This document shows, in pieces, positions 5,301 through 59,252 of a stretch of DNA of 64,000 bases. The stretch's first letter is position 1. Each line of letters opens with the position of its first letter. The notes under the pieces were generated by a model. That model did no database searches, was not told where the DNA came from, and worked only from the letters and a program-made list of their open reading frames with translations. Origin of the DNA: Eutreptiella sp. 'Long Island Sound 2002' (lineage: Eukaryota > Protista > Euglenida). The position numbers were made by a program, and so were the translations under genes. The stretch lies in the NCBI GenBank assembly GCA_964036045.1, contig OZ038378.1, forward strand, positions 185,752,001 through 185,816,000, written 5' to 3'.

Positions 5301-7911
5301 AACCAAGATTGGGCTACATCTCGGGCTGCATGGCACGAAATCCAATGCCAAGGCCAACAAGTCCACCCCCACTTTTTGCAGTTTCCGCCCTCAGAATGGT
5401 CCAAAGGGATACCTACACCACTGTATTGGTGCACACTTGGCCACAGCGAGCGAGCGGCCAGAGCCCACTTGGCCTGCAACATGGCCATTTTGGGGCCAAA
5501 ATACGCCTAAATTCAGGGCAACAACGGTCACACCATTGCAAATGCTTGGGATTCCACCAAATGGGCTTGCTTTCCTTGTGTCAAGGAAGCTCATTTCCAC
5601 TTATAGCTCCGCAACATGTCCATGCAATGCTCCTGGCCCGGGGGGTTTTGGCCAATATTTGCCCAGAGCCAAGATTTGGCTGCATCTTGGGCTACGTCAC
5701 TTGAGACCACCCAGTCCACCCACAATCCCCCATTTTTTGTGGTTTCCAATCCACAGAATGGCCCAAAAAGACATCTAGACCCCAGATGCCTTTGGTTCCT
5801 GGCCAGCAGCAAGGCTAAAGCACGAAAAGATCAAAGGCCTTCAGCACTCAATAATGTGGCTTCGGGATGCCCCATGACCCATACCCGTCCCAAATGACCC
5901 TTACCTCCAGATTTCAAAAATGTCTTACACCCCCCCCCCCATCCCTCCAAAATATTATTTTTGAGAAAACGGCCGGAAAAAAAACCAATGACTTGCATCA
6001 GAATCCCCCGCCCCAAATAAAAAGCCCATTTATTGCTACACCCCTCTCCCCGAATGTCTAGCTAGCAACAAGCACCAAGCAAACAAGTTGGCAACAACAA
6101 CAGAGAATTCACGTTTCCATTTTGCCAAACTCTGTGTCCCAACGCGTCGAGTTCAAATCTGTGCATTACATGACCTTCCCGACTCCAGAGTTTGCGTCCC
6201 CAACTCACCAGTGGTGGCCTGGGGCGTGGGCGCCAAGTCGGGAGGTGCCCTCCCACATGTGAGCAGTTTTGGGCCGAAAATGGCCATTTTTCGCCCAACA
6301 CAACCTGCAACCCGTTCAAATCAGTCAAATGAAGGAAGAAGGGCGGCACATGCTGCAACTGGCTGGACTTCTTCGTGTCAGAGCCCTTTGCCAGCCTCTA
6401 ACTCCACAACGCAGCCAAGAAATGCCCCCAAAATGCCCACCAATGAAGCAAAATCTGCATAGTCTGGCTGCAAACAGCCCCCAATGAAGAACAGGCCCTA
6501 TCTTGGGCGACGCGGCTCAAAATCCGGTTCCGCTGTCTCCTCACCACATGATAGAGGCCCAAAAAGGGGTATGTACAATCAAATAGGAGAAAAAAGTGGT
6601 GTTGGGGGGGGGGGAACGGTATGTAACAAATGTGTGTATGTATGCGGCACTATTCCACATGTATTCTGGTACAATTACCCAAATTGCGTGCCGTAGGGAG
6701 CACCGCAGGCGCCGCAGGCGCCACAGGGAAAGCGTTCCCATTGTCTCGAGGGCGTGGGGGGGGGGATTAGAGCCCAAGCTGTACTTGGAAACAAGGGGCC
6801 AAAAGAAAGAAGCGGAGATGACGAGCAAAGGGACAGACATTCCACACTCACCCTCATACTCTTTGTTTGTTTTGCTGGCCCTGCGCTTGTGCCTGAACCC
6901 TGCATCCCGACCGCTGCACTGATCATGGCTCCATGCACACTGACAATCACACATTGTATTTGTGTCTGGGATTTTTATGCGCCGGGGTGCATCCCACGAT
7001 GTGGGCAGCTCATATGCCCACGCCGACCGCGCAGCTCCAAACAGTAGACTGGAGCGGGCCTGTGGTGAGGCCCAGGCAGACCAAAAAATACATCAGCTGA
7101 GAGGGTAAGAGGGGGGGTGGGGAGTGGTCACCGAACCTCAAGCAACTGCCTCTGTCACTATCATTGCCACTGGTAGCCCCCCCCCCCCTCCCTCAGCAAA
7201 ACAAAAGTTGCTATGCACAACTTGTGTTTTGCTGGCCCTTCCTTGTCCCTGAACCCTGCATCTCCAACCCTGCACTGATCATGGCTTCGTGCACACCGAC
7301 AATCACACATTGTATTTGCGTCTGGGAAAATTTTTGTATGTCCTCGACTCACTGCACTGGGGGCGCAGGGGGTAATGCATGCATGCCAAAAGTGCCAATC
7401 GTGCTCTGGACCGCACTCTGGACACTAACGGACGCCCCACGGAACTGAAAACGAACGCAAACGGACGGCCCCCTCAATGGCAAACGGACTCAAACGGACG
7501 CCCCCTGCAAACACAAACGGATGCAAACGGACGCATAGCCGCCTAAAAACGGACGCTCGGGCTACGGATGCTCTGGCCACCAGACATGCAGAGCACAACT
7601 CAATACCCCACAACCAACGCCGCCCTGGCAAGCATCATGCCTTTTGGCAACTCGCAGGACCCCTGCGTATGACAAGCGCTCTTCCTGACGTGGTCTCGTC
7701 CAGCACAACTACTACACTGTTGGTACGTGTCCGTACCACAGAGTTCTTTTGGGATGAACACAAAGCAGTCGGGCGCGGCAGGACGCAGCGGACTCGCATG
7801 CACCCCCGCATACCTGCTCGTCCATGGCTTCCTTGGTGAGCTTTTTGCTTGGGGGCTGCGGCATGTACTTCACGGCCAGCTTCTCAGCATTCGCTTTGCG
7901 TCTTGTGGCCT
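2397..7911 (-). CDS. 3' part of a spliced gene for a coiled-coil repeat protein (repeat ~K.LT.E...(V/I)ER(L/V)(Y/F)...L..KY); 5' exon(s) not located
   Basis: Four exons join in phase through GT-AG introns: 7911(or 7909)-7814 (EATRRKANAEKLAVKYMPQPPSKKLTKEAMDEQ), 4791-4714 (VERVFKQAMTNHNSRMNNVLAKHTTK), 3734-3620 (ETRRQLTGAQMEDSIERLYRMQMEKAQTTHDRLRRKYY) and 2608-2397 (DQPGKSKRLTADELGALTARVYDERKNAREAILASLQDEY...DRLSAKPG*). The same ~35-aa motif recurs in the spliced product. Confidence 0.8.
2720..3075. mobile_element. Interspersed repeat family A (MITE-like), copy 1
   Basis: Shares the motif blocks (c)agttcagt..gaccccaacc.ccgcggcgtgggcagg, ggggcattttgaa, acacaa.tctggggg and tc.tcattggtcaccgtcgg with the TSD-flanked copy at 24328-24710. 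Confidence 0.7.
4890..5800. repeat. Imperfect tandem duplication of a ~370-390 bp unit
   Basis: Block tggtgtcaaggaa...ctcc...catgtcca at ~5180 and ~5575; block ccaagatt.ggct.catct.gggct...cagaatgg.ccaaa at ~5300 and ~5665. Confidence 0.6.
6865..7345. repeat. Direct duplication of a ~120 bp block
   Basis: gttttgctggccct...cctgaaccctgcat...tgcactgatcatggct...gacaatcacacattgtatttg.gtctggga occurs at ~6865-6985 and ~7222-7343. Confidence 0.8.
7425..7560. repeat. Cluster of AAACGGA(C/T) short repeats, probably a transposon subterminal region
   Basis: About 7 copies of (a)aacgga(c/t) in 135 bp. Confidence 0.5.
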
Positions 7912-43372: not shown

Positions 43373-44884
43373 GCAGGACAGATCACTTGACTCATGGCCA
43401 GCGCCTGTCAATGTTGCTGCGGGCCAAATTCTAATATTCATTGCCAGCAAATACTACGGTATTGCGTCTTCGAGTACAATGTGTGCCCCACAGAGCTCGC
43501 CGCCATGATACTGCGGTGCACGGCGCCGTGTGGTTGCAATCCGAAGTCGCATCCAGGACGACAACCCCCCACGGCCACACACCGCTTGACCACGCACCTA
43601 CCGGCCACACCCTCACAACCGCACACTCCCGTGACGGGGGACAGTCCGATGTGGATCTGTGCAGGGCACGAGGGTCTGTTCCGAAACCCGCACTCTTTTG
43701 CCTGGAGTGATTGGAATGCACTGAGGGCCTGCACGGGCTTGACGGACTTCTGTCAAGTGTTGCGTTGCGGGGCAGTCTGGCGAGAAACGTTGAAGGAAGG
43801 GGAGTGACGGACATTCCAGGCGGCGGTATTCCCGGCCGGCGGACATCGCCTCTTACCTCATCCTTGCCCTGCCGGATGCGGCCGAACTCTTTAGTTCCGA
43901 GGCTGCGCAGTCCAAGTGTCATGAAGCGAGCTATTGTACATCATGAAGGTTCGGGCCGCTCAGTCGTCGAAGCAGCAGGTGCACAAAATGGTTCACGAAG
44001 GCCACAGCGCCGTGCGGAGGGGCCGGGGTGCAGAGAGGACCTGGCTCAGCCGACAGAGTAGTCCCGCACACTGCCACATCGAGAGAGCACACACTCACAA
44101 CGCAGTTCGAGGGCATGAACACAAATGGCAACTTGGTCAAGGGGTTAGAAAACTTGTGTTGCGGGAGAACTCAACGGGTGCTCTGCTGCATGCAGCTCGA
44201 CGGTTGGAGGGTTAGCGACAGCAGTTGGGAACCGACAGCAATTGGAGGGGAACCGAAGGCACTTTGATGGCAAGTAGAGCGGCCCCTGGTGGCCGCCTTT
44301 AAAGCAAAAGAAACCAAAGAAATGCCCTTCTCTGCTGAGATCGGTAATCTGGTTTTGGCCTACAGTTTGGTCACAATAGTCCCCAACTCCCACATCCCTG
44401 TAGAGGGCACCAACCCTGCTGCAGCAGATGATGCCAGTGATAACCCCCGTTCCCGTGTGTGGATCCGCGGCAAGTGGTATACGGTGCCTTCCGGATACCC
44501 CCCAAATGCTGATGACCAACCTTTCTGCACAGAGCTGCAAGATGAGTTGAAAAACATATCTTTGGGACTGGCTGGGTGAGTGCTTTGAGCGGTGCCTCAT
44601 TTGGTGAAACTGGTTTCGAAACCCGACGACCCGCAAACCCCCAAGTGACGGGCCGTCGCGGGGATGGTCTCGGGGGGGGGGGGGGGATGAAGGGTTCGAT
44701 GTCAGACAGAGGACGTCCCCCACATCCCTAAACTACCCCCCCCCCAAAGCCTTCGTGGAACACCCCGCCTCCACATATCCTCAAGTCTCCATCCTCGATA
44801 CGCCCCGAAACGCCCCTTCAAACGCCCCGTTCCGGACCCCAAGCCCCCCCTCCGCCCCCCGCCCCCCTTTAATAATGCCACTGC

Positions 44885-46291
44885 TTAACCCGGCCACAGC
44901 GGAGTGCCTTCGAGCACTTTCATATCCGGCGCCCCCTCCATCGACCAAGACCCATCGACTGTTGAATAAGTGAAGGAGTCGGCGGCTGAGTAACCGTGCG
45001 GGCCCATATCGTGATGAAAGAACAGCGCCCCACCTGCGGCAAGGAGCGGAATGCAGCGAGTCGGAGGGGCAAAACACAGGGACAGAGGGGGCCAGAGTGC
45101 GGTTTGGGGGGGGGGGGTGGACAAAGCCGAAAGCATTCCCGTTCGTTATGTAGGGGGAGAGTTTGCATTGCAAACACGTCGGGTAACAGTAGGAATTGCC
45201 GCTTCAGAGGGTAGGAGCTGTGGGGCAAAGATTGCAAGCAACTGCCAGCTCATGAACCGCGATTCTCGGTTGGAATGGGCGGCCCACCACTGCGAAAGCA
45301 TCCGCCCGCAGTGAAGGCTCGTCCCAGGGCGGTCCTTAACGGAAACAAAAACCTTCATTGCGTTACGTGTCACCCAACCAACGCGCACACACCGACTACG
45401 TGCCCACTACACACCCACTGAACACCCGCCATACGCCGACTATACGCCTGCTATACGCCCACGATGCGCTCACTGTACGCCCACTGCACGCCCTCTGTGC
45501 ACCCGCTCTGTGCCCACTATCCGGTCGCAAGGGTGCGGATGGTGCTTGTGGAGGTAGCTGAGGGTTGTGGAGGGTCGCTGCGGGTTGTCACGGATGTCCT
45601 TGTTGAGGAGCGTAAAGTGCGGGGGGGGGGGGGGGGGGCTGTTCTCGATAATCGAGGGGCGGAGTTTGTTGCTTGAAGGTGGTGGAGGATTTGTCAAGTC
45701 TCTTGAGGACGTTTTGTTTCGACTTCCCTGCCTGACATGCACTGCACTGCTGCACTCACAGTCAATTCTTCGGACAGCCATGTACTGCTCACCATGCTGA
45801 AACACAGTAAACTCTGAACAAGGGTCAAAACATAAAGTTCTTGGGAACTTTTAGGTTGGAGTTGTACCCAGAGCTTTAGGGGTGAGAGGGTGACAGAGGG
45901 ACCTCAGGGGTAGTCGACGGCTATGGATGCTCGTTGAATGGGCGTATTGCGCGCGTCAAGTGGGCGTATAGTGGGCACGCAGTGGGCCCCAAAGGCCCGC
46001 CATACCCCTGCAGCCCTGCACAACCCTCATCACAAGGGGCCCGACAAGACCTGAGAAGCAATCCAATAGCAAGTCCGAACTCTTGATAGGGTCCTTGCAC
46101 ACGGGGCACGTAAATTGCACGCACGCGCGGTTGCCTACCGGATCCAAAAAGCGGTTACTGGCAGGGCTCTGTAGCAGCCGGGCCAAATCGAAGCTTTGGG
46201 GGTGGAGGCATGTTGTGCCGCGCACGGGCACCTCGATGATGTCGCCGCCACTGGGGTCCCGCAGGGAGACCTCTATGGTGGGGCCTGCGTT
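44885..46291 (-). CDS. SP-RING (zf-MIZ, PIAS/Siz-type SUMO E3 ligase) domain exons
   Basis: Exon 46291-46051 (cag|AAC...TCA G|gt) encodes NAGPTIEVSLRDPSGGDIIEVPVRGTTCLHPQSFDLARLLQ...FTCPVCKDPIKSSDLLLDCFS. It joins in phase 1 to exon 45033-44885 (cag|GT GGG), which contains the DGSW motif that follows SP-RING in PIAS/Siz proteins. Confidence 0.8.
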
Positions 46292-46429
46292 CTGTGAAGG
46301 GCACGGAGAATGGCTACACGGGCCTGGGAGTGGCAATGCCCCCATCCCCTGGGCTACGGTTCCCAGTACCTTCGCCCCTACCGCCTTGCCCAAGTAAAAA
46401 ATTAATATGGTACATACGCCCCCTGTGTC

Positions 46430-46745
46430 TTACACAAGCCGTGTTGCTGGTTGAGGGACGTTTCTCCCTCGTTGAACACGAAAAACAGCCATGACAGCGT
46501 TCACAGAGCGCTGCGTATACACAAAATCGTGCATCTGCAGACGCCGAGAGGTGCACAAGACATAGAGCGGGGCACAAAGGCTTCCCCAACTATTCAGGCA
46601 AAGGCTCAGAAAGCTGCATGCAATCGTGTGAGTGCTCATGCACAGCCTCACAAGTACAGAACCACAACTGTGCATGCACAGGTGGCCCCCTTGCTTGTTG
46701 GCCGAGACGCTTGTTGCAGCCTCCTCCCCCCACATCTATGGCTCT
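46430..46745. mobile_element. Interspersed repeat family C, copy 1
   Basis: About 310 bp colinear with 50415-50745 (ctcgttgaacac...catgacagcgtt...acacaaaatcgtgcat.tgcagacgccg...gttggccgagacgcttgttgcagcctcctccccc.acatctatggctctt). Confidence 0.85.
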
Positions 46746-47246
46746 TAAACCCCTCTGGCCCTGGATTCGGCAACGGGGCTGATTGTGGTCAAGCAGGGCT
46801 TCTTTACTTCGGCAGCAATGAGTTCTCTGATGGTTCGGCTCAAGCTTGCATCCCATCTCATCTTTTGTTTGGAGCTCTTCTAATAGCACCAGTACCAGCC
46901 ATTTCCAGGGGCAGTCAGGAGCAATCAGCTCTGACCGCCCAAATCTAGCAGAACACAATCTACAGCTTCCATGAAGGGCAGTGGTCAGCGTGGCCCAATG
47001 CAAGGGTATGACCCAAGGATACCAGCGCAGTCAGGCCTCATCCTTTGACATCGCTCCATCACCGGACGTGATGGTTTGTATGCACAGTGCAATATGAAGC
47101 CGCTGCTAGGCTGACAGTCTTGGTAGTATGCGCAAGTCAAAGCCATTGTTGAGGCCATACTTCTTCTCCAGGGCTCTTTGCTGCGTTTGGGACAGAGCAT
47201 TGAGGGAGGACAGGTACGGCACCAGTTTTTGTTTGTCGCCTACGTG

Positions 47247-47975
47247 CAGGGATTCTACCATTTCCGTGATTGGCCGAAAAAACCCTTCTGTGATTTTCCG
47301 TATATTTCCGTGATTTTCTGTGGTGTTTCCGTGGTACAAAAATGTTCCTTATGCATCCGCTTTGCCTCACCTGGACACCCACAAGAGACGAAACAAAGCA
47401 CAAGACATTTGGGGGCGGTCTACTGCCATTTTGCGAACCGTTCTTCAACATCACCATTGCAAAACATGGTGACACAGGCCTCACGCAAGTCCTTGCCCAT
47501 GCGCTGCCTGTTTTTAACATCAACCAGTCCAGCCAGACTAAATGACCGCTCGATTGCCGCGCCTGTGACAGGGTACCACAAATATGGAGCCACGGCCTTG
47601 TGATCCTGGAAATTGCTGCGCCCTAACACGTGCCGACATTTTCGACCCCCGCTGCCAGACCTTCCGTTTCTTTGCAGCAGGAGTGCCATTTTCATCAGAA
47701 GAAGACATGTCACAACTGAAAACACACAAAGAAATACACACTCTAACACTTAGCAAACAGGAACAACAATAGCAAACAATAGGAACTTTCATTTCCGTTT
47801 CCGTGATTTTCTGTGATTTTCCGTGGCGACCAGGAACAACAATAGCAAACAATAGGAACTTCAATTTCCGTTTCCGTGATTTTCCGTGATTTTCCGTGAT
47901 TTCCGTGATTTTCAACGTTGGCCGATTTCCGTGATTTTCCGTGATTTTCCTGCCACGGAAATACCAGAATCCCTG
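47247..47975 (-). mobile_element. Non-autonomous hAT element (internal deletion derivative) retaining the transposase dimerisation domain
   Basis: 22-bp TIRs (CAGGGATTCTaccATTTCCGTG and CAGGGATTCTggtATTTCCGTG), many subterminal TTCCGTGATT repeats, and flanks ctacgtg/ctatgtg. The minus-strand peptide WYPVTGAAIERSFSLAGLVDVKNRQRMGKDLREACVTMFCN fits the hAT C-terminal dimerisation motif. Confidence 0.9.
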
Positions 47976-49068
47976 CTATGTGGGCCGCCGGACCAACCCA
48001 AAGGTTGTTGGGAATGAGGTTCTTTGGGAGTCAGTACAAGGTCAAGAGCCTCAATGGTACAGTACATGGGTGTGTCGCAGCTCCACACGTTCTCCCTCAA
48101 TCTGCCGGACCTTTCCACACTTGTCAATTTCGGAGAATGTCATGATTCTGACTGGAGCTCTGGCTGGCGACTACGACACAGTACAAAACCGGGGAGTGAA
48201 AGGGATGTAGGCACGTCATGGTGGCTTTGACTGCAGGTGGCGGCTGTGGGGGACATTGTCGTATATCCTGGTTGCACTTTACCCTGCGTCCACACTCTCC
48301 TGAATTACTCTTCAGCCTTTCTACGTCTCCGTGTATCGCCGGTTTTATCCTTCCCAGCCATTGGCTGCTGACTATTGAGTCTCTTGTGCTGAGCTGTCTA
48401 GGCAGCATTCACCCCTGAGACCTCACTAGTTCTCCTGCTGAGTCTTTTTTAGTTGCCTGTCTTCGTATGGGGGCCCCATGGCTGGTGCTAAACAGTGCCG
48501 CCCCACATATAGGGGGCAGTTAGCATGGGCCAATGCATACTGATCAACATCAAGTCTAATGGCTTTCTTTGACCCATACTAACACCGGATTTGCGGCCAT
48601 GACGTCTGCGATCTTCTTCCTGTGTTGTCATGCCCTTTGTGTGCCAAGCGGTGCAGACCATCCTTCCCTCTGAAACACGCAAGAAGCCACCGCTGATCCA
48701 CGACGTCTCGCAATGCAGAAAAAGAGACGACCACTGTTGCAACGGTGGCAGGAACGGCCTACCACCAGCAAATATGGCCCACAAGCCGCCACTGGGTCCA
48801 CGAAATCCGGTGTCGGTCACGCAACAATGACCTTGTGGTCTCCGCAATGTAAGGGCTGCAAACCCATGGTGGAGGAGAGTAAAGAGGAGCCATCCTTTAG
48901 GGTGGCCAATCAGGAATGGCAAACCCACATCCAGAGGGTGCAAAAGATTGGGTGGGAACTGGCAATCAATTTGGCAGCTAACACTCCTAAGAAACATACC
49001 ACCCTTGCGGCGGAGGGAATCAAAAGTGCAACCCAAACCACAATCAAAACATTGGTGAAAGACATCAC

Positions 49069-52000
49069 GCCATTGTCCCCTGGTAGAGGCCAACAGGGGC
49101 GGTTCCGGTGCTCCACTGTTGTATCCTTCCTTCTTTCCTGCGCACGTTGTGAGAAGGCCTGTGCCACTTCATGCAACTCCTGTTTGACGCTGACTCCAAC
49201 CCCAACCCTCACTCCCATCTGCATTACTATACCTCTTTTAAATTGGATTGGAAGAGGGTCCGTAAATCAGCAGCCGACAACTCATTGACTTCGACATAAA
49301 TACCGGCCCGCTCCGAATGGGCCCTGCCGACCACAGTGCACTTGATCTGGATGTCCTCCCAAAACATACGAGCCTTCCGCTGGGCAGACACAGGGGCTTC
49401 AGGGGCCGCGGGCTTGCTCGCAGACAGTGACAGCGGCGGCACGGTCACAGGCTCGTCGTCGCTACTGTCTGCGTCGTCAAAAGGGCAGGGCTCCACCAGC
49501 GCCCCCTACAAATGTTAAACAGAGGACGGGAACGGAATCGTCTGAAACCCGCAACGGGCATCGGTCCTGGTTGCTAATGAGGACGCATCTCCTGCGGTGC
49601 CTCCGGGATGCGGTAAGAGTTACCCGCTAGGCACAGGGGTAGGCTGGTGGGTTCTCAAGTGATGCCAAGCGGTTATTGGGTTCAAGGGCCAATGCCCGGC
49701 AGTGCAAACGGTTGGAGGGGACGTGACGACGGCCCGTTGCAGTTGCAGGAATGGACGATCGCTCGCGGGGGTCGGGACGCCGTCGAAAGCAAAGGCCTTT
49801 ACAAAGGGTTCTGAAGTGTGTGCGTAGCCTCCATTTTTGTCACTTTCATTTTCGTTTTCATTTCATTTGTTCGTTCCGAGGACCTCAAGGATGGGGGGGA
49901 GGGGGCTGACATTGTCTCAGGGGACTGCGAACACTCCCACAAACATTGTGGGGCGTGCATTACAAAAGGGCGACCGTTCATTTCACGAAGCTTGCCGATG
50001 TCAGTAGTTGGGATTGTTGGGACACAATGGGGGGGGGGGGGGGACGCAATTTCAGCCGTAAACAAAAAACATCGAACGGATGGAAGAGCCGGGCGAGGAA
50101 GGTGCAGTTCTGTGGGGGGTCACAGTGGAATGTCAATCCCCCTGCGCACCGTTGCAGCCCGACCGCCCCGGGGCACCGAAGGGGGGGAGGGTGCGGGGGT
50201 CCACATGCACATGGCACACCTCCTTGGCATCCCCGCCCCCGGGCTCGTCCCACTTGTGCAGCTCCCGTCTCCACGTCTTCACTGCACCTGCAAAGCGCAG
50301 AAACGCTGCGTCCGGATCGTGACCTTCTGGGGCACTGACCCCAGACGAGAATGGCAGGCGGTCCGGGGGGGCGGGGGGGTTAAGGCGAGTCAGTGGGGAG
50401 CGGGGAAGGTGGTATAGTGGCCTGTTCAGGGGACGTCTCCCCCTCGTTGAACACCAAACGACACCCATGACAGCGTTTACGGAGGGTACACACAAAATCG
50501 TGCATTTGCAGACGCCGCGCGGTGCGTGCACAGACATAGAGCGGAGCACAAACACAATCCTCTACCGACCGGCTTCCGCACTCATTCAGGCACAGGCTTA
50601 GAGAGCTGCATGCACTCCCGTTGGCATTCATGGACAGCCATAAACAAGGGCAGAACCACAACTGTGCATGCACAGTCGACCCCCTTCCATGTTGGCCGAG
50701 ACGCTTGTTGCAGCCTCCTCCCCCCACATCTATGGCTCTTGATTCACGATGGTCCCGGATGAACCAGTCCAACAAGTGCAGAGTCGGGCATATGCCTGCG
50801 GCGTGAAAGTAGAGGCGTGCACAGGACAGGGAGATCAGGAAGGAGGGCCGGTCTCTAATGGAGTATTGTGCACCGTTGCCCTGTCCGCGTGACGACCTGT
50901 GCTAAGGTAGAGGGACTAGGGTGGCACGATCTGGGCCAATAGATGTGCAAAAGGAGTTCAGCATCATAAGATGGCTGGTGTACTTAATGTGGGTCTTGCC
51001 GGGAAAGTACCTCTAATTCGTCACAACGTGAAGCCAGTGTTCTGGGTGCAAAGGTGGTGATAGCGTGCATGCGTACAGGGCGGCAAAGGGAACTTACCTT
51101 GTCTCCCTTTTTTGGTGCCCCTGTGGCAGATTCAGATTCCAGTTTTCATGGTACCGTGATCCAGGGGCACAGTGTTCGGGTGGCACAGTGTGAAACAAGA
51201 ATAGGCTTCAGGGGCGCAATCAGGGTGCGTGTTCCATAAAGGCTGGTTGATTGCCATGGAATGCAGCTGGTGGCCGTCATTCAGTGACCTGTGCTTTGTC
51301 TGACCTGCTTATTGGGAGCAGTCAGTCGCGAGGCCGGGGGGGGGGGGGGGATGTTGTGTTGTGGGCAAGGGTGGAGTATTGGCCCCACTGTTCTCACTTA
51401 CATCCAGACCCCATGCTGTCCGGTCCCCTGCCAGCGCTGACAGGCTTTACAAACAGCCAGAAAGTGAAGTGTGGAGTGCTCTCCACATCCAATGTGGGAA
51501 TCGGTAACAGGGCCAGAGAAAGGGCGGGGGGCATCCGGCAATGTTGGCACCACAACACAATACAACGCAACACCACACCACACAACACAACACAACACAA
51601 CACAACACAACACAACACAACACAACCCAGCACAATGTACCATACCTTACCATGCCATATCACCACACAAAACAACCAACGAAAACACAACGCAACAATA
51701 ATGATTGGAAACCCCTTGGCCGTGTGATAAACTATTCGTATCAATGACGGGAAGCCCCCTCCGGCGCTGCACAGTCCAAGGTTTGGCTTGCGTTGAAGCA
51801 TTACCCAGATAGGACAGCGGAGGGGATCCTGGGGATCCTTTGACCTGCTTCTAAGACAGCTTTGTACACAGGGGGTAGCTCAGTTCAGTTCCAGACCCTC
51901 GGCCCTGCGGCGGGAGCAGGGGGGGCGGTTGGCAGGGGGGGAGGGGGGTTTTTGGCATGTCGCCATGGGGGAGGGGGAGGGGGGGAGGGGGGGGGCATTT

Positions 52001-53222
52001 TTAGAAATCATTCTGAGCATTTGAAGGTACACAAAGGGGCAAAAATCGCGGTCCGTTGGCAATGGGAAGCAGTCTTGTTTTTACCCCCCCCCCCCCCTGC
52101 CAACCCCCATCCCTCTGGCAATGTACCACTGGCACAGAAACAGGGCGATAGCGACGGGGTCGGTGGGGGCGACAACCGTCAAACTGCGTTGTCTACCCAG
52201 AGCAGGAGCAGAGGGATGTTGTAGGCAAACGGCGATATAACACACAACCGACAGTACCAGTTTATCATTAACCAGGAAAGGAAAATTGTAGGCCATTCGA
52301 GATAACACACAAATGGCCTGGCGAGCAGTGTAAGGCATAAGGCCAACATATGAAGTTCCATTGGTTGTAGGCCATTGTTCAAGGAAGTGCAGCAATTCAT
52401 CCAATATGTGCAGAAATAATAGCCCCGCACAACAAGGAGTACAAGTTTCCTTAACAGGCTGGGTAATATGAGGGCCCGTCACCTACTAATATGAGCTCTT
52501 GGGATCATGGTTGGTGGTGAAGGGGGTGGGTTCAAAAAACTACCAGGGGTGGGCAGCCTACTCGGTTACCCCCAACAGCTGGGGGAGGTTCCATTTTACG
52601 AGGTGAGAGTGGGACAGTTGTCCCGCTCCTCACAAGGGCTGCTTCTGCCCCTCGGCGTCCCTGGCATGCCAGCACGCTCCGACCGAAGTGTTTCCCAGGA
52701 CCACAGAGTTTAGGTGCTCACCACCACAAATGACCTGGGAAATGCGACACAGGGCCCGGGGGTTCCGGATCACCAAGGGCCACCCATCAGTGGTGCGCAG
52801 CATGTTCAGGCATTTTGCCAGTTCATGTTGGGGGTTCACCGCCCGTGCAGTGTGCAGTGGGCGTTGCTCCAACCAAAACCGTGCTGTGGGACCTGGGCAG
52901 GAAGAGGGGGGGGGGGGTCCAGCCCTACACATGGCCCCTCCCGTGGCTTGAGAAGAGGCCCTGCACCAAAATACGACTCACTCACTACGCTCAATGTCTG
53001 CGGTCAGGCACACCATCGAACGACCGCTTACTCGGCCACTTCACCGTGTGATCTGGTGTCCGGGGGTGCGCTCTCGTTCGCTTGTCCTTCGGCACCAGTT
53101 CTCTGTACCGCGCATAGCCCACGGTGTTCTTGCCGTACCCGATCTGTTTGCCCCTCTGGCTCACCTTGTGCTGGTCAGGCTCTGGCTCCCCATTCACGTG
53201 CCAGTCCGCATCCTTCCACCAG
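49069..53222 (-). CDS. SLBP: Histone stem-loop-binding protein (SLBP)-like RNA-binding domain gene; internal exons only, N-terminus unresolved
   Basis: Exon 53222-53014 (WWKDADWHVNGEPEPDQHKVSQRGKQIGYGKNTVGYARYRELVPKDKRTRAHPRTPDHTVKWPSKRSFD) joins in phase 1 to exon 50287-50220 (GAVKTWRRELHKWDEPGGGDAKE). This matches the SLBP consensus RxKQIxYGKNTxxYxxY..VPK..R...HPxTP...S.R.FD..(V/I)K.WR..LH.WD. In-phase exons 49505-49233 and 49179-49069 follow, with lower confidence. Confidence 0.9.
50415..50745. mobile_element. Family C repeat, copy 2
   Basis: Colinear, same-orientation homologue of 46430-46745. Confidence 0.85.
51548..51632. repeat. Short (CAACA)n array in the SLBP intron
   Basis: cacaacacaatacaacgcaacaccacaccacacaacacaacac... 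has the same unit and orientation as 21590-22985. Confidence 0.9.
51875..52110. mobile_element. Family A repeat, copy 5
   Basis: ctcagttcagttccagacc...ggggcattttt...cattctgagcatttgaaggtacacaaa. Confidence 0.6.
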
Positions 53223-53514
53223 CTGCACCCAAATACAATCAAAAATGTACAGAAAGGGGCTGCAGTGGGTGGTACAAAGGGCACCGGAACAGGGCGGCAC
53301 AGTAGCACTGAATGGCACAAAGTGGCACTGTTTGGCATAAGAGGATACCGGGGGCGGGGGGGGGGGGGGGGAAGCCCATTTTCCGCTACGCCAGGGTGGC
53401 ACAGCACCGAGGCAAGGAGGCGCTAGTTTTGGTGATGGGTGCTGCCACTTGGGAGGAGCGACAGGAAGATCATGGTGTGGTCCATCAGTATAGGGCCACT
53501 CAACAGCGTCAAAG

Positions 53515-54176: not shown

Positions 54177-54830
54177 TTACGCACGTCTGTGCCGGCCGTG
54201 CTTCGCCAACCCATCTGCTGCTTCATTTCCCTCTACATTGAGACGTGACGGCACCCATCGAAGCTGCAGCAGATCTCCTGCTTCTTCACGCAGCCACATA
54301 ATGTGCCCCCACAGGTCCCTGTGTCCCACCTCCCCTGATGATGTTTTCCACCCATGGCGTCTCCACTTGTCCGACCAAAGCGCGATGCCCTTGAACACAT
54401 ACTCAGAATCCAATACCACGATTATTCATTCACCCTGCACCCGACCCAGCATTGCATGCAGCACCTCCTGCAGCCCCCCCCTGCTGATACTCTGTCGTTC
54501 ATACGCCGGCACGTGTGCCGAAAAATTTCTGTGGTGGTGTAGGCCATACTAAACCCCATACCCCGCCTGCATCCACCCCCTCACTCGCTTCGCGGAGCCA
54601 TCGGTGTACACCACCACCCAGCCCAGGTGTTTGTTGGACAGGGGGGGGGGGGGGGGAAGATGACACCACGTTTTGGAACCCTGGGAGAGCGCCCAGTTTT
54701 CTCCCCCAAACCCCTCAAACCAAACCCTTCCCCCTCTGATAAACGATGTCGGGCTGTCAGGTGGCGGCGCATGTCCCCAGTTCTGCGGCCTTCTTGGTCT
54801 TGCAAGCCCTTGAGGTGCTGTCATCAGGTC
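54177..54830 (-). mobile_element. Retroelement fragment: C2H2-like finger plus a complete but stop-containing RNase H1-type domain
   Basis: VVVYTDGSAKRVRGWMQAGYGV...ERQSISRGGL...VLDSEYVFKGIALWSDKWRRHGWKTSSGEVGHRDLW...WVPSRLNVEGNEAADGLA. Upstream lies DMRRHLTARH. Confidence 0.85.
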
Positions 54831-56689
54831 GGGCAGCAAATAAGAATTCCCTGCAGAAACCGTCCATTGCATCACTTTCCATGAACACAGATACTGGAAA
54901 AACATGTGATGTAAGCGTGCCGTGTTTCCTGTGCCCAAAGCCTGGAACGTGGTGGCACTATAAGAGGGAGGAGGGTCCAGGATTTGTCAGCCAAACATCC
55001 AAGCTGCGACACCCCCCCCCAGCCCCCCCACTCAATTCCTTGAAAGCGATGCCTGATGCAAAACCCTGCAAAAATATTGGAAAAAAAAACAAATCGGGCA
55101 ACAGACACCCTGTATTTTCACTGTTGTCTTCCCTCTCCACACTTTCCCAAACTCCCTAACGTCCAACGCAATGGAATATGGTGTGATGCAGCACACAATG
55201 ATGTGACTTCCGTTGTTGAGCTCGGTGGTCCTTGAGGGTGTTGTTGCACCGTGCGCGCACCGTGACAAGAGCCCCTCCTTGGCTGCAGCCCCCGCCAGGC
55301 CTGTAAGCTCACCGCCAGTGCACTCACTGACGCACCAGGGGGAACCAGGGAAAACGGGGGTAAACGGGGAAATGCAGTATCGTGTGCAGAGAACAAAAAA
55401 GTGATGGGGAAAATCGGGGGGGAATGGGGGCTGGGGTGACAGGAAAATGGGTGACAATTCTCGAATTCCCCTCATTTGTTCGCGTCCCAGTTTTCCCGTG
55501 CTTCCCAAGAAAAGCGTCCTCCCCATTGTCGCCTTATTCAACAACTGCTCACGACCACTTCACCGACGGAAAAACGGGAAAAATGTGAACTCACCGCTAC
55601 TCACCGACAAGGCGGCGAGCTGACGTCCCTGCCACTCTTGTATGCCGCCTCTCATTCGCCCACCTCCTGCCTCATTCCTCCTCCATCCCACTCCTCCCCT
55701 CCGCCAGCCCCGCAGCCCGGTCAACATGCCGGTCGCCCCCGTGTTTCCCCGGCCCGCCCCTTGTCTTCCGCCCCAACAGTCCTCTGTCTCACCGCAGTGG
55801 ACCAGGGGCATACAGGAGCAAGGGTGGCACTGGAGATGGTACCGGCACTACCCTTGGGGGCACTGCATGACACAAGGCACATTGAGTGGCAAGACGCAAT
55901 CATGATTCCACTGCAACAGTTTGAATGTCATTGAGATGCTGAGTGGCAAGGGGTGGGGTGGGGTGAGGCGGGGCGGATGGGGGGAGGATGTCCTGGGGTG
56001 GGCACTGGGGGCCGGGCAGGGCGTGGGGCAGGGCGTGGCACTTCGGTACAGAAGGCATGCCTATCATCCTCATCCTTTGCCTTGGGTTTGGCCCTCTTCA
56101 CCGTATGGCCCGAGGGCTCGTCGGGCATTTCGTCGCGCTGGGGTCGCTTCTGCGTCTTCGAAGCCCATTGACTGGGCTGGCGCCTGAACGTTGTGTCGTG
56201 GAGCGGTGGTGGTGCTGCTAGCGGCAACGGCGACGGCAACGGCACTGGCAACAAAGGCAACAACAACGTTCACGGACGATTGAACATCAGGCAGGGAGGG
56301 AATGCGAGTGGGTCAGCAGGCATGGGTCTGCTCGTGCAGCAAACCGATTGTTGTTGCCGCGGCTGTACTTAGAGGGCGGCCTTGTGCTCTCATCGTCCTG
56401 GGCACGCTTCCGCACATTGTGGGGACCCTGCTCCGTGACTTGCAGCGTTGACTCCGATAAGATGTAAGGGGGGTAGAAGGGCTGATCGTTGTGGGACTGC
56501 CAGTCCTCGTCGTCGTCAGCCCAGCCTGAGTGCACAGCCATCCCCAGAACCCATGCGACCGTGGGGCTTGGATTGGGCTAGGGCTGGGGCCATGAAGCGA
56601 CGGATACTCAGCTACCGAATGCCCCTGTGTCACAGGCAACCGATCACAGCCCATGAATGTCCTCATGAATGTCCTGCTGCACGGCAGCA

Positions 56690-57800
56690 CTTCCAGACCA
56701 GTACTGAATGTTGCCTTGAATTCGCTTGCTAGCTATCGAATGTTTCGTAGCCTGGCTTGGGTTAACTCATCCCCCTCCCTGGGAACCTGGTCATCAGCAG
56801 CTTACACCGCGGCTCCACAAAACTGGCAGCGCTACTGCCACTGCTGTCACTGTCACTACTGTCTGTTGATTGCACAGACTCTTCATCTGTCGACTGCACA
56901 GAGCACTGTGACCCCCCGCTCATGTCGTCATCACTGGGGTCATCCATTTCCTGCAACCCCAGGTTGGTGTCCGAATATCCCGCATCTCACGGCCAGTAAT
57001 CACTGCAGCAGACGCTTGCGCTGAGCCTCTTACCGCCCCCTCATCCACCCGTTCATTGCCCTCATCCGCCCGTTCATTGGCCTGCACCCCAACATGGGAC
57101 GGCACCCGTTGCACTGTAACGCTATCGCCATACAGCTGCCACTGGACCCAGAGCTTAGCCCAGGGCTAGGGATGGGAGGGGGGGTGAGAAGTTGGGGCTG
57201 GGGTGTGCGGCTTCCACTAGGAATTAAAGTGGGCTTGGCAATGGGCTGAGACTGGGACTGGAGCTTAGCTGGGGCTGGATCTGTGAGTTGGACTGGGATT
57301 GAGGCTGAGGGTGGTGCTTCCCTGCCCCACATGCTGCACAGAAATGTTGTGTTGTGCTATTGCGGAAAAGGTCCCTCTGCACGTCACACAGCCCAGAAAT
57401 AAGAGACCACTAAAAACCGGGAATGGTCACGAAAAACCGGGAATGGTCACGGGCTGCAACCCGGGGGATGTTCCATGAGGGCGTGTTGGGGACATATTCC
57501 ACCGTGTCAGGTGCTCGTTTTGCTGCTCGAGGTCGGCGTGTCTGTTGGGGAGTTGGGGGGCAAAAAGTGCAGCCTCTCTGGGTCACAGGGGATGTGGATC
57601 CCACTGCTCGGCATTGCGGCATCAGTGCCCTCATAGTCCACTCCTTTGCCATCCCCCATGCGCCCCAGTAGTTTCACGGCGCGGTGACGTGGTACTTGTG
57701 GAACGGTGATGAACGGGTGCCCTCCCCCATGAGTACGCAAAGGGGCATCAAATTGCCCAGTTGTGCTGATGATTGTGTCGTGCGCACACCACGTCAAGTG
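56690..57800 (-). mobile_element. RNase H family fragments (C-terminal ends)
   Basis: VPSHVGVQANERADEGNERVDEG (internally duplicated NE.AD) is followed by an acidic Ser-rich tail. A second frameshifted VP.H..LG fragment lies at ~57600-57800. Confidence 0.6.
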
Positions 57801-58421: not shown

Positions 58422-59252
58422 GGCGAGCCCGTCCCGCCTGTTGACCACAACCCGGTCTTCCATTCACCCGGCGCCGCACCGCTGCACCGCCGTAGGGACT
58501 GTCCTGTTCGCCTGCTTCCCCTGTCAGCCAGCAGTCTCGAGACTGGAACGCAGCACTTGTCCCAGCCCCCTCCAAGTCAGGGAAAACAACGGTCACACAG
58601 GGGTCCTGTGCCTAAGGTAGCACCTACCGGCAGCCGGTCCCTGTACCATTGGCTGAAAATCACGCGCTGCGCTCGCGCAACAGGGGACAGCGTACGTTAA
58701 TTGCCCTTGAAGCATTGGTTAGGTTGGTGGCAACACATGGCACTTGGTAATCGCAAGAACATTCCCGTTTTTGGTATTCCGCTGCAGAAGGCAGGCTTTT
58801 TGTAGAAGGGGGAGGAAGGGGGGGGGATTGGTCTGAGATCAAAGGGTTTGTGTACCAAAAATGGCTCAAAAATCTTTTCCCTTTAGAAAATTTGATTTTT
58901 ACCCTGAGAGATTTCTGCCGGAGGGGTGGAGGTCTGAGGAGGGGGGGGGGGGGGGATCGTCCTCCTTCCCCTTTTCCGGTCTCAGCACAAGCCTGCCAGG
59001 CGGGTGTGCAGGAGACATACTGTCAGCAACATGCTGCCGGTCAATTTGAGAGGCCAGCGCACCATACTGGAGAGGGAGCTGGCTGCTGGTGGCAGTGTCA
59101 CAGTCATCACTGGGATTGGAGTCCACAATGCCGGTGGAGCGGTGACTGACATGGTCAAACACTCCTGTGAAGATCCCCTCGTCTCTTGCACTGTCAACCA
59201 CCATTTCTTACAAACAAGAGGCTGCAGCACGAGGGTCATGCACGTGATTTAG
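58422..59252 (+). CDS. Possible Smr-domain gene fragment (2 exons) or pseudogene
   Basis: Exon 58986-59252 encodes VNLRGQRTILERELAAGGSVTVITGIGVHNAGGAVTDMVKHSC, resembling Smr DLHG...VITGxGxHS. A phase-0 AG/GT-bounded candidate exon lies at 58422-58616. Confidence 0.45.
58780..58965. mobile_element. Family B repeat, reverse-orientation copy
   Basis: ggtctgagatcaaagggtttgtgtaccaaaaatggctc...poly-G is an inverted homologue of 15300-15425. Confidence 0.5.

What the first reader, a model, noticed from the sequence alone, without database searches (positions are those of the whole stretch)
44885..53222. Candidate SLBP RNA-binding domain + SP-RING (SUMO E3) fusion gene
Seen: the SLBP-domain exons continue through phase-0 GT-AG exons 49505-49233 (acidic DDADSSDDE, then MFWEDIQIKCTVVGRAHSERAGIYVEVNELSAADLRTLFQSNLKE) and 49179-49069 (ELHEVAQAF...PLPGDNG). 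The SP-RING exon at 46291 also starts in phase 0, on the same strand, and I could not identify an independent start for it. The 2.8 kb between is TE-filled, like other introns here. Established: SLBP binds the 3' stem-loop of replication-dependent histone mRNAs, and SP-RING domains (PIAS/Siz/MMS21) are SUMO E3 modules. I know of no characterised protein combining them. Inference: one protein could couple histone-mRNA stem-loop recognition to SUMO ligation, acting as an RNA-guided SUMO E3.
Basis: partly seen in the sequence, partly recalled or inferred. Interest (0 to 1): 0.85.

Follow-up and report, generated by a model that had tools for sequence, protein, structure and literature searches.

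The report
Euglenid SLBP fused to SUMO ligase
This euglenid alga has one spliced, expressed gene whose protein joins the RNA-binding domain that recognises histone-mRNA hairpins to a PIAS-type SUMO-ligase module; three other euglenid sequences share the layout, I found no paper describing it, and it suggests a direct link between histone-mRNA handling and SUMO modification.

Summary
The fusion is real. One minus-strand gene of 8 exons (59204-44885) gives an uninterrupted 475-aa ORF. It carries an SLBP RNA-binding domain (Pfam E 4.8e-18) and a Siz/PIAS-type SP-RING plus C-terminal domain.

- **RNA support:** Spliced contigs from three estuary metatranscriptomes match with no mismatches and cross junctions 53014>50287, 50220>49505, 49233>46291 and 46051>45033. 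Together they chain the two domains. No single contig spans both.
- **Orthologues:** Full-length transcripts of Euglena longa (491 aa) and E. gracilis (502 aa), and an environmental mRNA contig (446 aa), have the same collinear layout in one ORF.
Exon 49179-49069 is absent from the RNA contig and from all orthologues.
- **SP-RING module:** It keeps the C-x-H...C-P-x-C zinc ligands. An AlphaFold model of the E. longa module matches Siz1, Siz2, PIAS2 and PIAS3 at Z 10.6-11.3, against about 4.3 for Nse2 and generic RINGs. SAP and PINIT domains are absent.
- **Rarity:** Only 2 of the 150 best SLBP-domain clusters carry zf-MIZ, and both belong to this group.
- **Literature:** No paper I could search describes the architecture.
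- **Untested:** RNA binding and SUMO E3 activity are inferred only.

This is a new variant of known kinds and of moderately high interest.

The parts
59021..59204 (-). Exon 1 (ATG at 59204-59202; donor GTATGT). Encodes the N-terminus with the 'GIVDSNP' motif shared with the orthologues.
   Evidence: tblastn of P0010/P0151; model and splice context. No RNA evidence here; orthologue-guided.
56345..56525 (-). Exon 2, encoding 'SWADDDEDW...PPYILS...GPHNVRKR', conserved with the Euglena orthologues.
   Evidence: tblastn E 2e-4 to P0010; AG acceptor and GT donor keep the frame. Orthologue-guided.
56061..56183 (-). Exon 3 (tentative): basic/acidic stretch 'RRQPSQW...SGHTVKRAKPKAKDEDD'. The 3' boundary would be a GC donor.
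   Evidence: This boundary keeps the frame into exon 4 and is the one I found that does. X1 record 8 runs about 35 nt into an exon upstream of 53222, but that sequence was not shown. This is the weakest part of the model.
53014..53222 (-). Exon 4: SLBP RNA-binding domain, profile positions 2-55 (KQIGYGKNTVGYARY...HPRTPD...SKRSFD).
   Evidence: Pfam PF15247 E 4.8e-18, 65.4 bits against cut-off 27. Drosophila SLBP 4tv0 E 3.3e-14 and human 4l8r E 2.4e-8. RNA contig X1 record 8 joins 53014 to 50287.
50220..50287 (-). Exon 5: end of the SLBP domain (AVKTWRRELHKWD).
   Evidence: Pfam positions 57-70, E 2e-3. X1 record 8 covers it with 0 mismatches and continues on both sides.
49233..49505 (-). Exon 6: linker with the conserved 'LVEPCPF' motif plus an acidic/Ser run, then a helical region (MFWEDIQIK...LRTLF). 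Phase 0 at both ends.
   Evidence: tblastn to P0151 E 1.6e-11. About 19-20 letters of X1 record 8 fall at 49505-49487, and 61 letters of X3 record 19 at 49293-49233 (from bin depths). A long helix is predicted in the orthologue model.
46292..49232 (-). Intron 6 (2.9 kb).
   Evidence: Depth profile and joint; Dimer_Tnp_hAT E 0.0075, below cut-off; repeat pair at 87% identity.
46051..46291 (-). Exon 7: SP-RING (VSLRDP...RGTTCLH...QSFD...FTCPVC...LLLD) with a lineage-specific insertion of about 11 aa.
   Evidence: Pfam zf-MIZ E 2.7e-7, 30.7 bits against cut-off 33.5. PIAS3 4mvt E 0.0012 with the window's exon alone and 1.6e-7 with the orthologue profile. X3 record 19 covers 46291-46090 and X2 record 9 covers 46121-46051, both with 0 mismatches.
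44885..45033 (-). Exon 8: C-terminal domain following the SP-RING (GGALFF...DSFTYSTVDGSW...EGTPLWPG) and stop codon TAA at 44887-44885.
   Evidence: X2 record 9 joins 46051 to 45033 and runs to 44881. tblastn to P0151 E 2.8e-6 with the shared end 'GTPLWPG'. This region of the orthologue model aligns to the Siz1 SP-CTD.

Best explanation
Shown: a single, expressed, intron-rich euglenid gene (8 exons, 59204-44885, minus strand) encodes a 475-aa protein. A canonical SLBP-type RNA-binding domain (about residues 176-248) is followed by a conserved acidic linker and helix, and then by a Siz/PIAS-type SP-RING with its C-terminal domain (about residues 345-475). The SAP and PINIT domains that normally precede the SP-RING in Siz/PIAS ligases are absent, and the SLBP domain sits in their place. 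The architecture is conserved in Euglena gracilis, E. longa and an uncultured relative.

Inferred: the SLBP domain docks the protein on an RNA hairpin. The target would be the 3' stem-loop of histone mRNAs, or, as may hold in other Euglenozoa, another set of S-phase mRNAs. The SP-RING then recruits SUMO-charged Ubc9, so that proteins of that mRNP or its processing site, or the protein itself, are SUMOylated close to the bound RNA.
For: Gene and fusion:
- RNA contigs with 0 mismatches cross 53014>50287, 50220>49505, 49233>46291 and 46051>45033.
- The spliced model is an uninterrupted 1428-nt ORF.
- blastp of the model to E. gracilis P0151 gives 38% identity over residues 20-475, E 6e-88.
- P0010, P0151 and P0153 each carry PF15247 (E about 1e-24) and zf-MIZ in one complete ORF. 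P0153 lies on an intron-free 1748-nt contig.

SLBP domain:
- Pfam E 4.8e-18.
- All residues invariant among 150 SLBPs are present.
- The alignment to Drosophila SLBP shows KQIxYGKNT, HPRTP and S-K/R-R-S-F-D kept.

SP-RING:
- The profile hits PIAS3, PIAS2, Siz2 and Siz1 at E 1.6e-7 to 5.5e-3.
- The four zinc ligands are invariant in all four proteins.
- The model of the E. longa module has pLDDT 85-93 over the RING.
- The top 10 Foldseek hits are all Siz/PIAS.
- VIA-align gives Z 10.6-11.3 over model residues 44-193, matching Siz1 317-444, against Z about 4.3 for Nse2 and generic RING/U-box folds.
- All ten nearest atlas families are zf-MIZ.

Plausibility of the link: in human cells SUMO2 promotes histone pre-mRNA 3' processing through FLASH and Lsm11 (PMC12305476).
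Against: - No single RNA contig spans both domains in this organism. Each junction rests on one contig from an environmental metatranscriptome, and two of the joints are read from bin depths.
- Exons 1-3 have no RNA support here, and exon 3 needs a GC donor.
- zf-MIZ scores below Pfam's gathering cut-off in the window (30.7 against 33.5 bits).
- The first conserved SP-RING Cys is Asp, and the loop residue after it is Ser in the window where the orthologues have Leu.
- An insertion of about 11 aa sits inside the RING.
- The window's own exon folded alone with low confidence (pLDDT 58).
- No RNA target is known. There is no histone gene or Rfam histone stem-loop in the window.
- E3 activity, Ubc9 binding and substrates are all untested.
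Confidence: 0.6

Rival explanations
1. The fusion is real but the SP-RING module is not a ligase. It would serve as a docking or regulatory module, for example binding Ubc9, SUMO or SUMOylated partners to bring SLBP to a processing body, or directing SUMOylation or turnover of SLBP itself to restrict it to S phase.
For: The domain departs from the Siz/PIAS consensus: the first Cys is Asp, there is an insertion of about 11 aa with an extra invariant Cys, and the score is below Pfam's cut-off. PINIT, which positions substrates in Siz1 (from established knowledge), is absent. In human cells SUMO acts in histone mRNA processing through non-covalent SIM contacts as well (PMC12305476).
Against: All four zinc ligands, the aromatic residue two positions before CPxC and the SP-CTD are conserved across four proteins that are only 35-38% identical overall. 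That argues for selection on an intact E2-binding RING. PIAS3, an active ligase, also has Ser in 'QSFD'.
Confidence: 0.25
2. The protein is an active SUMO E3, but its SLBP domain no longer reads histone stem-loops. It would bind other RNAs or act with a cap-binding partner, as proposed for the trypanosome SLBP2-EIF4E2 pair that maintains S-phase mRNAs.
For: Kinetoplastid histone mRNAs are polyadenylated, yet SLBP homologues persist and bind EIF4E2 (10.1101/2022.05.10.491326). No histone stem-loop could be examined here.
Against: The RNA-binding domain is as close to animal and plant SLBPs (57-64% identity) as it is to the other euglenid proteins, and it keeps the invariant residues. A 2026 survey reports SLBP-like proteins in Euglenozoa among protozoan lineages and states that many of the protozoan stem-loop sequences, though highly diverged, retain the core structural features needed for SLBP recognition (10.64898/2026.10.14.759114).
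Confidence: 0.12
3. There are two adjacent genes (SLBP and a small SP-RING protein), and the apparent junction is an artefact of read-through or polycistronic RNA or of contig assembly.
For: No single contig spans both domains in this organism. Euglenozoa make long primary transcripts.
Against: The junction 49233>46291 removes a 2.9-kb intron at GT-AG sites and keeps the frame. The SP-RING exon has no start codon of its own. Three orthologues from separate data sets have one continuous ORF through both domains.
Confidence: 0.03

Closest known systems
Metazoan SLBP (human SLBP, PDB 4L8R/4QOZ; Drosophila SLBP, 4TUW-4TV0)
   Same: Same RNA-binding domain (Pfam PF15247; E 3.3e-14 to Drosophila SLBP). 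It is followed by an acidic/Ser-rich stretch, as in Drosophila SLBP (the Drosophila feature is from my own knowledge).
   Different: Known SLBPs have no enzymatic domain. Of the 150 best SLBP-domain clusters, 148 carry no zf-MIZ. Here about 130 C-terminal residues form an SP-RING plus SP-CTD module.
Siz/PIAS SUMO E3 ligases (yeast Siz1 3I2D/5JNE, Siz2 6U75, human PIAS2 4FO9, PIAS3 4MVT)
   Same: SP-RING with C-x-H...C-P-x-C zinc ligands and the following SP-CTD. Sequence E down to 1.6e-7 and structural Z 10.6-11.3 over about 120 residues.
   Different: There is no SAP, no PINIT and no long C-terminal tail with a SIM. The first conserved Cys is replaced by Asp. An insertion of about 11 aa with an extra invariant Cys sits inside the RING. 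The N-terminal targeting part is an RNA-binding rather than a DNA-binding domain.
Trypanosoma brucei SLBP2 (Tb927.3.870) with EIF4E2
   Same: A euglenozoan protein with an SLBP-type domain whose RNA targets are not canonical histone 3' ends, linked to S-phase mRNA abundance (10.1101/2022.05.10.491326).
   Different: No SP-RING is reported for it, and none of the non-euglenid SLBP hits carried zf-MIZ. Orthology to the euglenid protein was not tested.
Su(var)2-10/dPIAS in piRNA-guided silencing
   Same: A PIAS-type SUMO ligase brought to its site of action by RNA-based target recognition (10.1101/533091). This is a functional analogy to an 'RNA-guided SUMO E3'.
   Different: There the RNA recognition is done by a separate Piwi-piRNA complex that recruits the ligase. 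Here an RNA-binding domain is part of the same polypeptide.
Nse2/Mms21 SP-RING of the Smc5/6 complex
   Same: SP-RING type zinc finger.
   Different: Clearly weaker match: zf-Nse E 0.022 and 15 bits, and structural Z 4.0-4.3 against about 11 for Siz/PIAS. This protein is not a member.

Membership tests
SLBP family (Pfam PF15247 SLBP_RNA_bind) | RNA-binding domain scoring above the curated cut-off | tested here: met
   Exon 4 alone scores 65.4 bits against cut-off 27, E 4.8e-18. Exon 5 supplies profile positions 57-70.
SLBP family (Pfam PF15247 SLBP_RNA_bind) | Conserved core motifs (KQIxYGKNT, HPRTP with the Thr-Pro, S-R/K-R-S-W/F-D, WRRxLHxWD) | tested here: met
   Alignment to Drosophila SLBP. 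All columns invariant among 150 SLBPs are present in the window's sequence. The roles of individual residues are from memory, not tested.
SLBP family (Pfam PF15247 SLBP_RNA_bind) | Binds the 3' stem-loop of replication-dependent histone mRNAs, and such stem-loops exist in the organism | not testable with these tools
Needs EMSA or CLIP and a scan of euglenid histone 3' flanks.
Siz/PIAS SP-RING SUMO E3 ligases | SP-RING (Pfam zf-MIZ) recognisable by sequence | tested here: inconclusive
   Window exon: E 2.7e-7 but 30.7 bits, below cut-off 33.5. Orthologues: 27.9-33.5 bits. The orthologue profile hits PIAS3 at 1.6e-7 and PIAS2 at 9e-7 in the PDB, and the window exon alone hits PIAS3 at 0.0012. 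So it is significant but under Pfam's own threshold.
Siz/PIAS SP-RING SUMO E3 ligases | Zinc ligands C-x-H ... C-x-x-C | tested here: met
   C28, H30, C62 and C65 of the exon are invariant in all four proteins and align to the PIAS3 ligand positions.
Siz/PIAS SP-RING SUMO E3 ligases | SP-RING plus SP-CTD fold | tested here: met
   Tested for the E. longa orthologue module, which is 51% identical to the window in the RING. Siz1 scores Z 11.3, rmsd 3.0 over 120 residues, chain residues 317-444. Siz2, PIAS2 and PIAS3 score Z 10.6-11.2, and the next fold scores Z 4.4. The window's exon folded alone was too uncertain to use (pLDDT 58).
Siz/PIAS SP-RING SUMO E3 ligases | PINIT domain before the SP-RING | tested here: not met
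   No PINIT hit in the window exons or in the three orthologues. The region before the RING is predicted as one long helix plus a short element.
Siz/PIAS SP-RING SUMO E3 ligases | N-terminal SAP domain | tested here: not met
   No SAP hit in any of the proteins. The N-terminal half carries the SLBP domain instead.
Siz/PIAS SP-RING SUMO E3 ligases | Ubc9 binding and stimulation of SUMO conjugation | not testable with these tools
   Needs an in vitro SUMOylation assay.
Nse2/Mms21 SP-RING | zf-Nse signature and Nse2-like fold with an Smc5-binding helical N-terminus | tested here: not met
   zf-Nse scores 15 bits against cut-off 27. Structural Z is 4.0-4.3 to 3HTK, 2YU4 and 7P47, against about 11 for Siz/PIAS.

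The most novel reading that the evidence does not exclude
Euglenids carry an RNA-hairpin-tethered SUMO E3 ligase. SLBP itself would deliver SUMO conjugation to the histone-mRNA 3' end processing or translation machinery. By the logic that proteins fused in one lineage often interact in others, SLBP and a PIAS-type ligase would then cooperate in other eukaryotes too. That would point to the E3 behind the recently reported SUMO2 dependence of human histone pre-mRNA processing.
Probability: 0.3. Interest if true: 0.85.

Novelty: new variant of a known kind. Interest (0 to 1): 0.66.

Why it matters
SLBP is the master factor of replication-dependent histone mRNA metabolism, and PIAS-type ligases normally find their targets through DNA- or protein-binding domains. 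A conserved natural fusion of the two would be, as far as I could find, the first SUMO ligase with a built-in sequence- and structure-specific RNA-binding domain. It offers a simple, testable hypothesis: SUMOylation is delivered in cis to a defined mRNP.

It also fits a 2025 finding that SUMO2 promotes human histone pre-mRNA processing (PMC12305476). In my term search of that paper I found no E3 ligase named, so the fusion may point to a functional partnership hidden in other eukaryotes.

Practically, the zf-MIZ scores fall at or just under Pfam's cut-off. Threshold-based annotation would therefore mostly miss the architecture, which may explain why surveys of SLBP evolution (10.64898/2026.10.14.759114) do not mention it.

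Tried and rejected
rejected. A contig including it would put letters in bin 48902-49092, where X3 has depth 0, and the orthologues lack it.
- **AlphaFold of the window's SP-RING exon alone:** pLDDT 58, so not used.
- **The search for homologous proteins with P0010 whole, and with the RNA-binding region of P0151:** only the same three clusters came back. Word-based sensitivity was too low to find even other SLBPs.
- **Profile search with A4:** added only stand-alone SLBPs.
- **Metagenome scans:** the first found nothing. The second gave one locus, L003, which lacks the C-x-H motif and is a chance match to 'FQCPVCD'.
- **Looking for a stand-alone euglenid SLBP:** the ten closest RNA-binding-domain hits were Haematococcus, Pyxidicula, Ginkgo or unnamed environmental sequences, so the question stays open.
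- **Rfam on the whole window:** no family, and so no histone stem-loop to test.
- **Phylogeny of the RNA-binding domain:** not attempted. The domain is about 55-64% identical to SLBPs of all lineages and gives no resolution.
- **Species identity:** left open. Earlier notes disagree (E. gracilis against Eutreptiella). My data show only 38% identity to the E. gracilis protein, and matching RNA in estuary samples.
Full report
**What is in the sequence**

- Pfam places exon 53222-53014 on positions 2-55 of SLBP_RNA_bind (E 4.8e-18, 65.4 bits, cut-off 27).
- Exon 50287-50220 falls on positions 57-70 of the same model. One SLBP RNA-binding domain is therefore split by a 2.7-kb intron.
- Exon 46291-46051 matches zf-MIZ/SP-RING (E 2.7e-7, 30.7 bits, just under the cut-off of 33.5). 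It matches zf-Nse far more weakly.

**RNA evidence in this organism**

Three estuary metatranscriptome runs hold 7-9% of the sampled words of the stretch. Laid on 44700-50400, their contigs match with no mismatches and skip introns.
- X1 record 8 (333 nt) covers exon 5. Its upstream loose end reads the reverse complement of the end of exon 4, giving junction 53014>50287. It runs through all of exon 4 and about 35 nt into a further upstream exon. Its first 19-20 letters fall at 49505-49487, giving junction 50220>49505.
- X3 record 19 (263 nt) covers 46291-46090. Its first 61 letters are not listed as a piece. The run's depth falls as 51 letters in bin 49093-49283 and 10 letters in bin 49284-49474, which fits only 49293-49233. 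This gives junction 49233>46291.
- The same depth arithmetic reproduces the listed pieces of X1 and X2 exactly, so I trust it.
- X2 record 9 (224 nt) joins 46051 to 45033 and runs to 44881, just past the stop codon at 44887-44885.

Together these contigs chain the SLBP domain, the linker exon, the SP-RING exon and the terminal exon. No single contig spans both domains. Each junction rests on one contig from an environmental sample.

**Orthologues**

A full HMMER search of 1.84 billion cluster representatives with the SLBP exon gave 1049 hits.
- Of the best 150, all have SLBP_RNA_bind and only two have zf-MIZ.
- One of the two is P0010, a complete 491-aa ORF from the Euglena longa transcriptome (EukProt EP00668). 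A follow-up search added P0151, 502 aa, E. gracilis EG_transcript_7762.
- The other is P0097. Its cluster includes P0153, a complete 446-aa ORF on an intron-free 1748-nt JGI contig.
- All three carry PF15247 (E about 1e-24) followed by zf-MIZ at 27.9-33.5 bits.

It also finds two more exons upstream, near 59138 and 56523.

**Gene model**

I built an 8-exon model:
- 59204-59021
- 56525-56345
- 56183-56061
- 53222-53014
- 50287-50220
- 49505-49233
- 46291-46051
- 45033-44885

It is an uninterrupted 1428-nt ORF of 475 aa. It aligns with the E. gracilis protein over residues 20-475 (38% identity, E 6e-88) and similarly with the other two. Exons 1-3 are guided by orthologues only. Exon 3 needs a GC donor and is tentative.

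**The C-terminal module**

- A profile of the four proteins hits the SP-RING of PIAS3 (1.6e-7), PIAS2 (9e-7), Siz2 (9e-5) and Siz1 (2e-4) among solved structures. The window's exon alone hits PIAS3 best (E 0.0012).
- The zinc ligands C-x-H and C-P-x-C are invariant.
- The first conserved SP-RING Cys is Asp in all four proteins. The Cys of 'QCFD' is Ser or Thr, as it is Ser in human PIAS3 itself.
- An insertion of about 11 aa with an extra invariant Cys lies between the ligand pairs.
- AlphaFold2 of E. longa residues 284-491 gave pLDDT 72 overall and 85-93 across the RING.
- The ten best Foldseek matches are all PIAS3, Siz1, Siz2 and PIAS2 (E 1.4e-6 to 1.4e-4), and the next hit is at E 0.12.
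- VIA-align gives Z 10.6-11.3 over model residues 44-193, matching Siz1 residues 317-444. By my knowledge of the Siz1 structure that is the SP-RING plus SP-CTD. Nse2 and generic RING/U-box domains reach only Z about 4.3.
- The ten nearest ESM Atlas families are all zf-MIZ families (ZMIZ, plant SIZ1-type, PIAS). None has an SLBP domain. The feature search agrees.
- No SAP or PINIT domain is detected.

The module is therefore a Siz/PIAS-type catalytic core without that family's usual targeting domains.

**The SLBP domain**

- Its best solved relatives are Drosophila SLBP (E 3.3e-14) and human SLBP (2.4e-8).
- The KQIxYGKNT, HPRTP and S-K-R-S-F-D motifs are kept, and WRRELHKWD follows on exon 5.
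- It is followed by a conserved 'LVEPCPF' motif and an acidic/Ser run. This recalls the acidic phosphorylated tail of Drosophila SLBP and, loosely, a SUMO-interaction motif. Both comparisons are from memory and were not tested.

**Mechanism**

Shown: one gene, one ORF, spliced RNA, conservation of both domains and of their key residues across proteins that are only 35-38% identical overall.

Inferred: the SLBP domain tethers the protein to an RNA hairpin, and the SP-RING recruits Ubc9~SUMO to modify nearby proteins or the protein itself.

The idea has biological precedent. SUMO2 promotes human histone pre-mRNA 3' processing via FLASH and a SIM in Lsm11. The text of that paper has no hit for 'PIAS' or 'E3 ligase' (PMC12305476).

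There are cautions.
- In kinetoplastids, the sister group within Euglenozoa, histone mRNAs are polyadenylated. SLBP2 there binds EIF4E2 and has unknown function (10.1101/2022.05.10.491326).
- A 2026 survey reports SLBP-like proteins in Euglenozoa but does not mention MIZ or SP-RING (10.64898/2026.10.14.759114).
- I could not examine histone genes of this organism, and Rfam finds nothing in the window.

**Novelty**

- No paper in the searchable library holds both 'SLBP' and 'SP-RING'.
- None links SLBP with Euglena in a relevant way.
- The one hit for an SP-RING together with an RNA-binding domain and 'fusion' is Su(var)2-10, which is recruited indirectly by piRNA complexes.

The Euglena sequences are public, with both Pfam hits precomputed, but they appear uncharacterised. 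I rate this a new variant of known kinds: an SLBP with an enzymatic module, or equally a PIAS-type ligase with an RNA-binding targeting domain. So far it is restricted to euglenids.

**Organism**

The orthologues and earlier notes of this scan place the genome in the euglenids. The notes disagree on the species. The 38% identity to the E. gracilis protein and the estuarine RNA argue against this being the E. gracilis orthologue. A divergent paralogue cannot be excluded.

**Operator rules**

Noticed in passing
window 47183-48137 (intron 6): High-copy repeat. DNA contig depth is 580-6300 against about 4-5 in unique flanks. It has 'GGAAAATCAC' micro-repeats and an ORF (47749-47420, minus) with a weak hAT dimerisation-domain remnant (E 0.0075, below cut-off). 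Diverged copies are transcribed in the estuary samples.
   Followed up: partly
window 46650-46766 and 50644-50760: A 117-nt direct repeat (87% identity) sits in two different introns of the same gene. The surrounding ORFs also resemble each other, so this is probably one more dispersed element.
   Followed up: no
window 54180-54425 (minus, intron 3): Decayed RNase H fragment (Pfam PF00075, E 2.3e-10). The upstream part of the domain is interrupted by stop codons. It is presumably a retroelement remnant.
   Followed up: partly
window 56762-56956 (minus, intron 1): A 64-aa acidic/Ser-rich ORF starting with ATG. It has no Pfam hit and no counterpart in the orthologues. It could be chance, a TE fragment or an alternative exon.
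   Followed up: no
window, many introns (e.g. 45620-45640, 50025-50040, 53350-53375): Homopolymer C/G runs of 10-20 nt are frequent in the introns. They create many spurious 'joints' and loose ends in the DNA contigs.
   Followed up: no
L001:121-139: The environmental orthologue's mRNA contig has CTTTCTGTTTTTTTTCG 13 nt before the start codon. From memory, this resembles both ends of the euglenid spliced leader. Because 120 nt lie upstream of it, the contig may be chimeric at the leader.
   Followed up: no
window exon 46291-46051, residue 57 of the exon (Cys in 'RACVQF'): An extra Cys, invariant in all four euglenid proteins, sits in the lineage-specific insertion five residues before CPVC. 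The usual first SP-RING Cys is Asp. This could be a rearranged first metal or structural site, which is speculative.
   Followed up: no
Pfam scores of P0010, P0151, P0153 and the window exon: zf-MIZ scores are 27.9-33.5 bits against a gathering cut-off of 33.5. Searches that apply Pfam's own cut-off would mostly miss the SP-RING in these proteins.
   Followed up: yes
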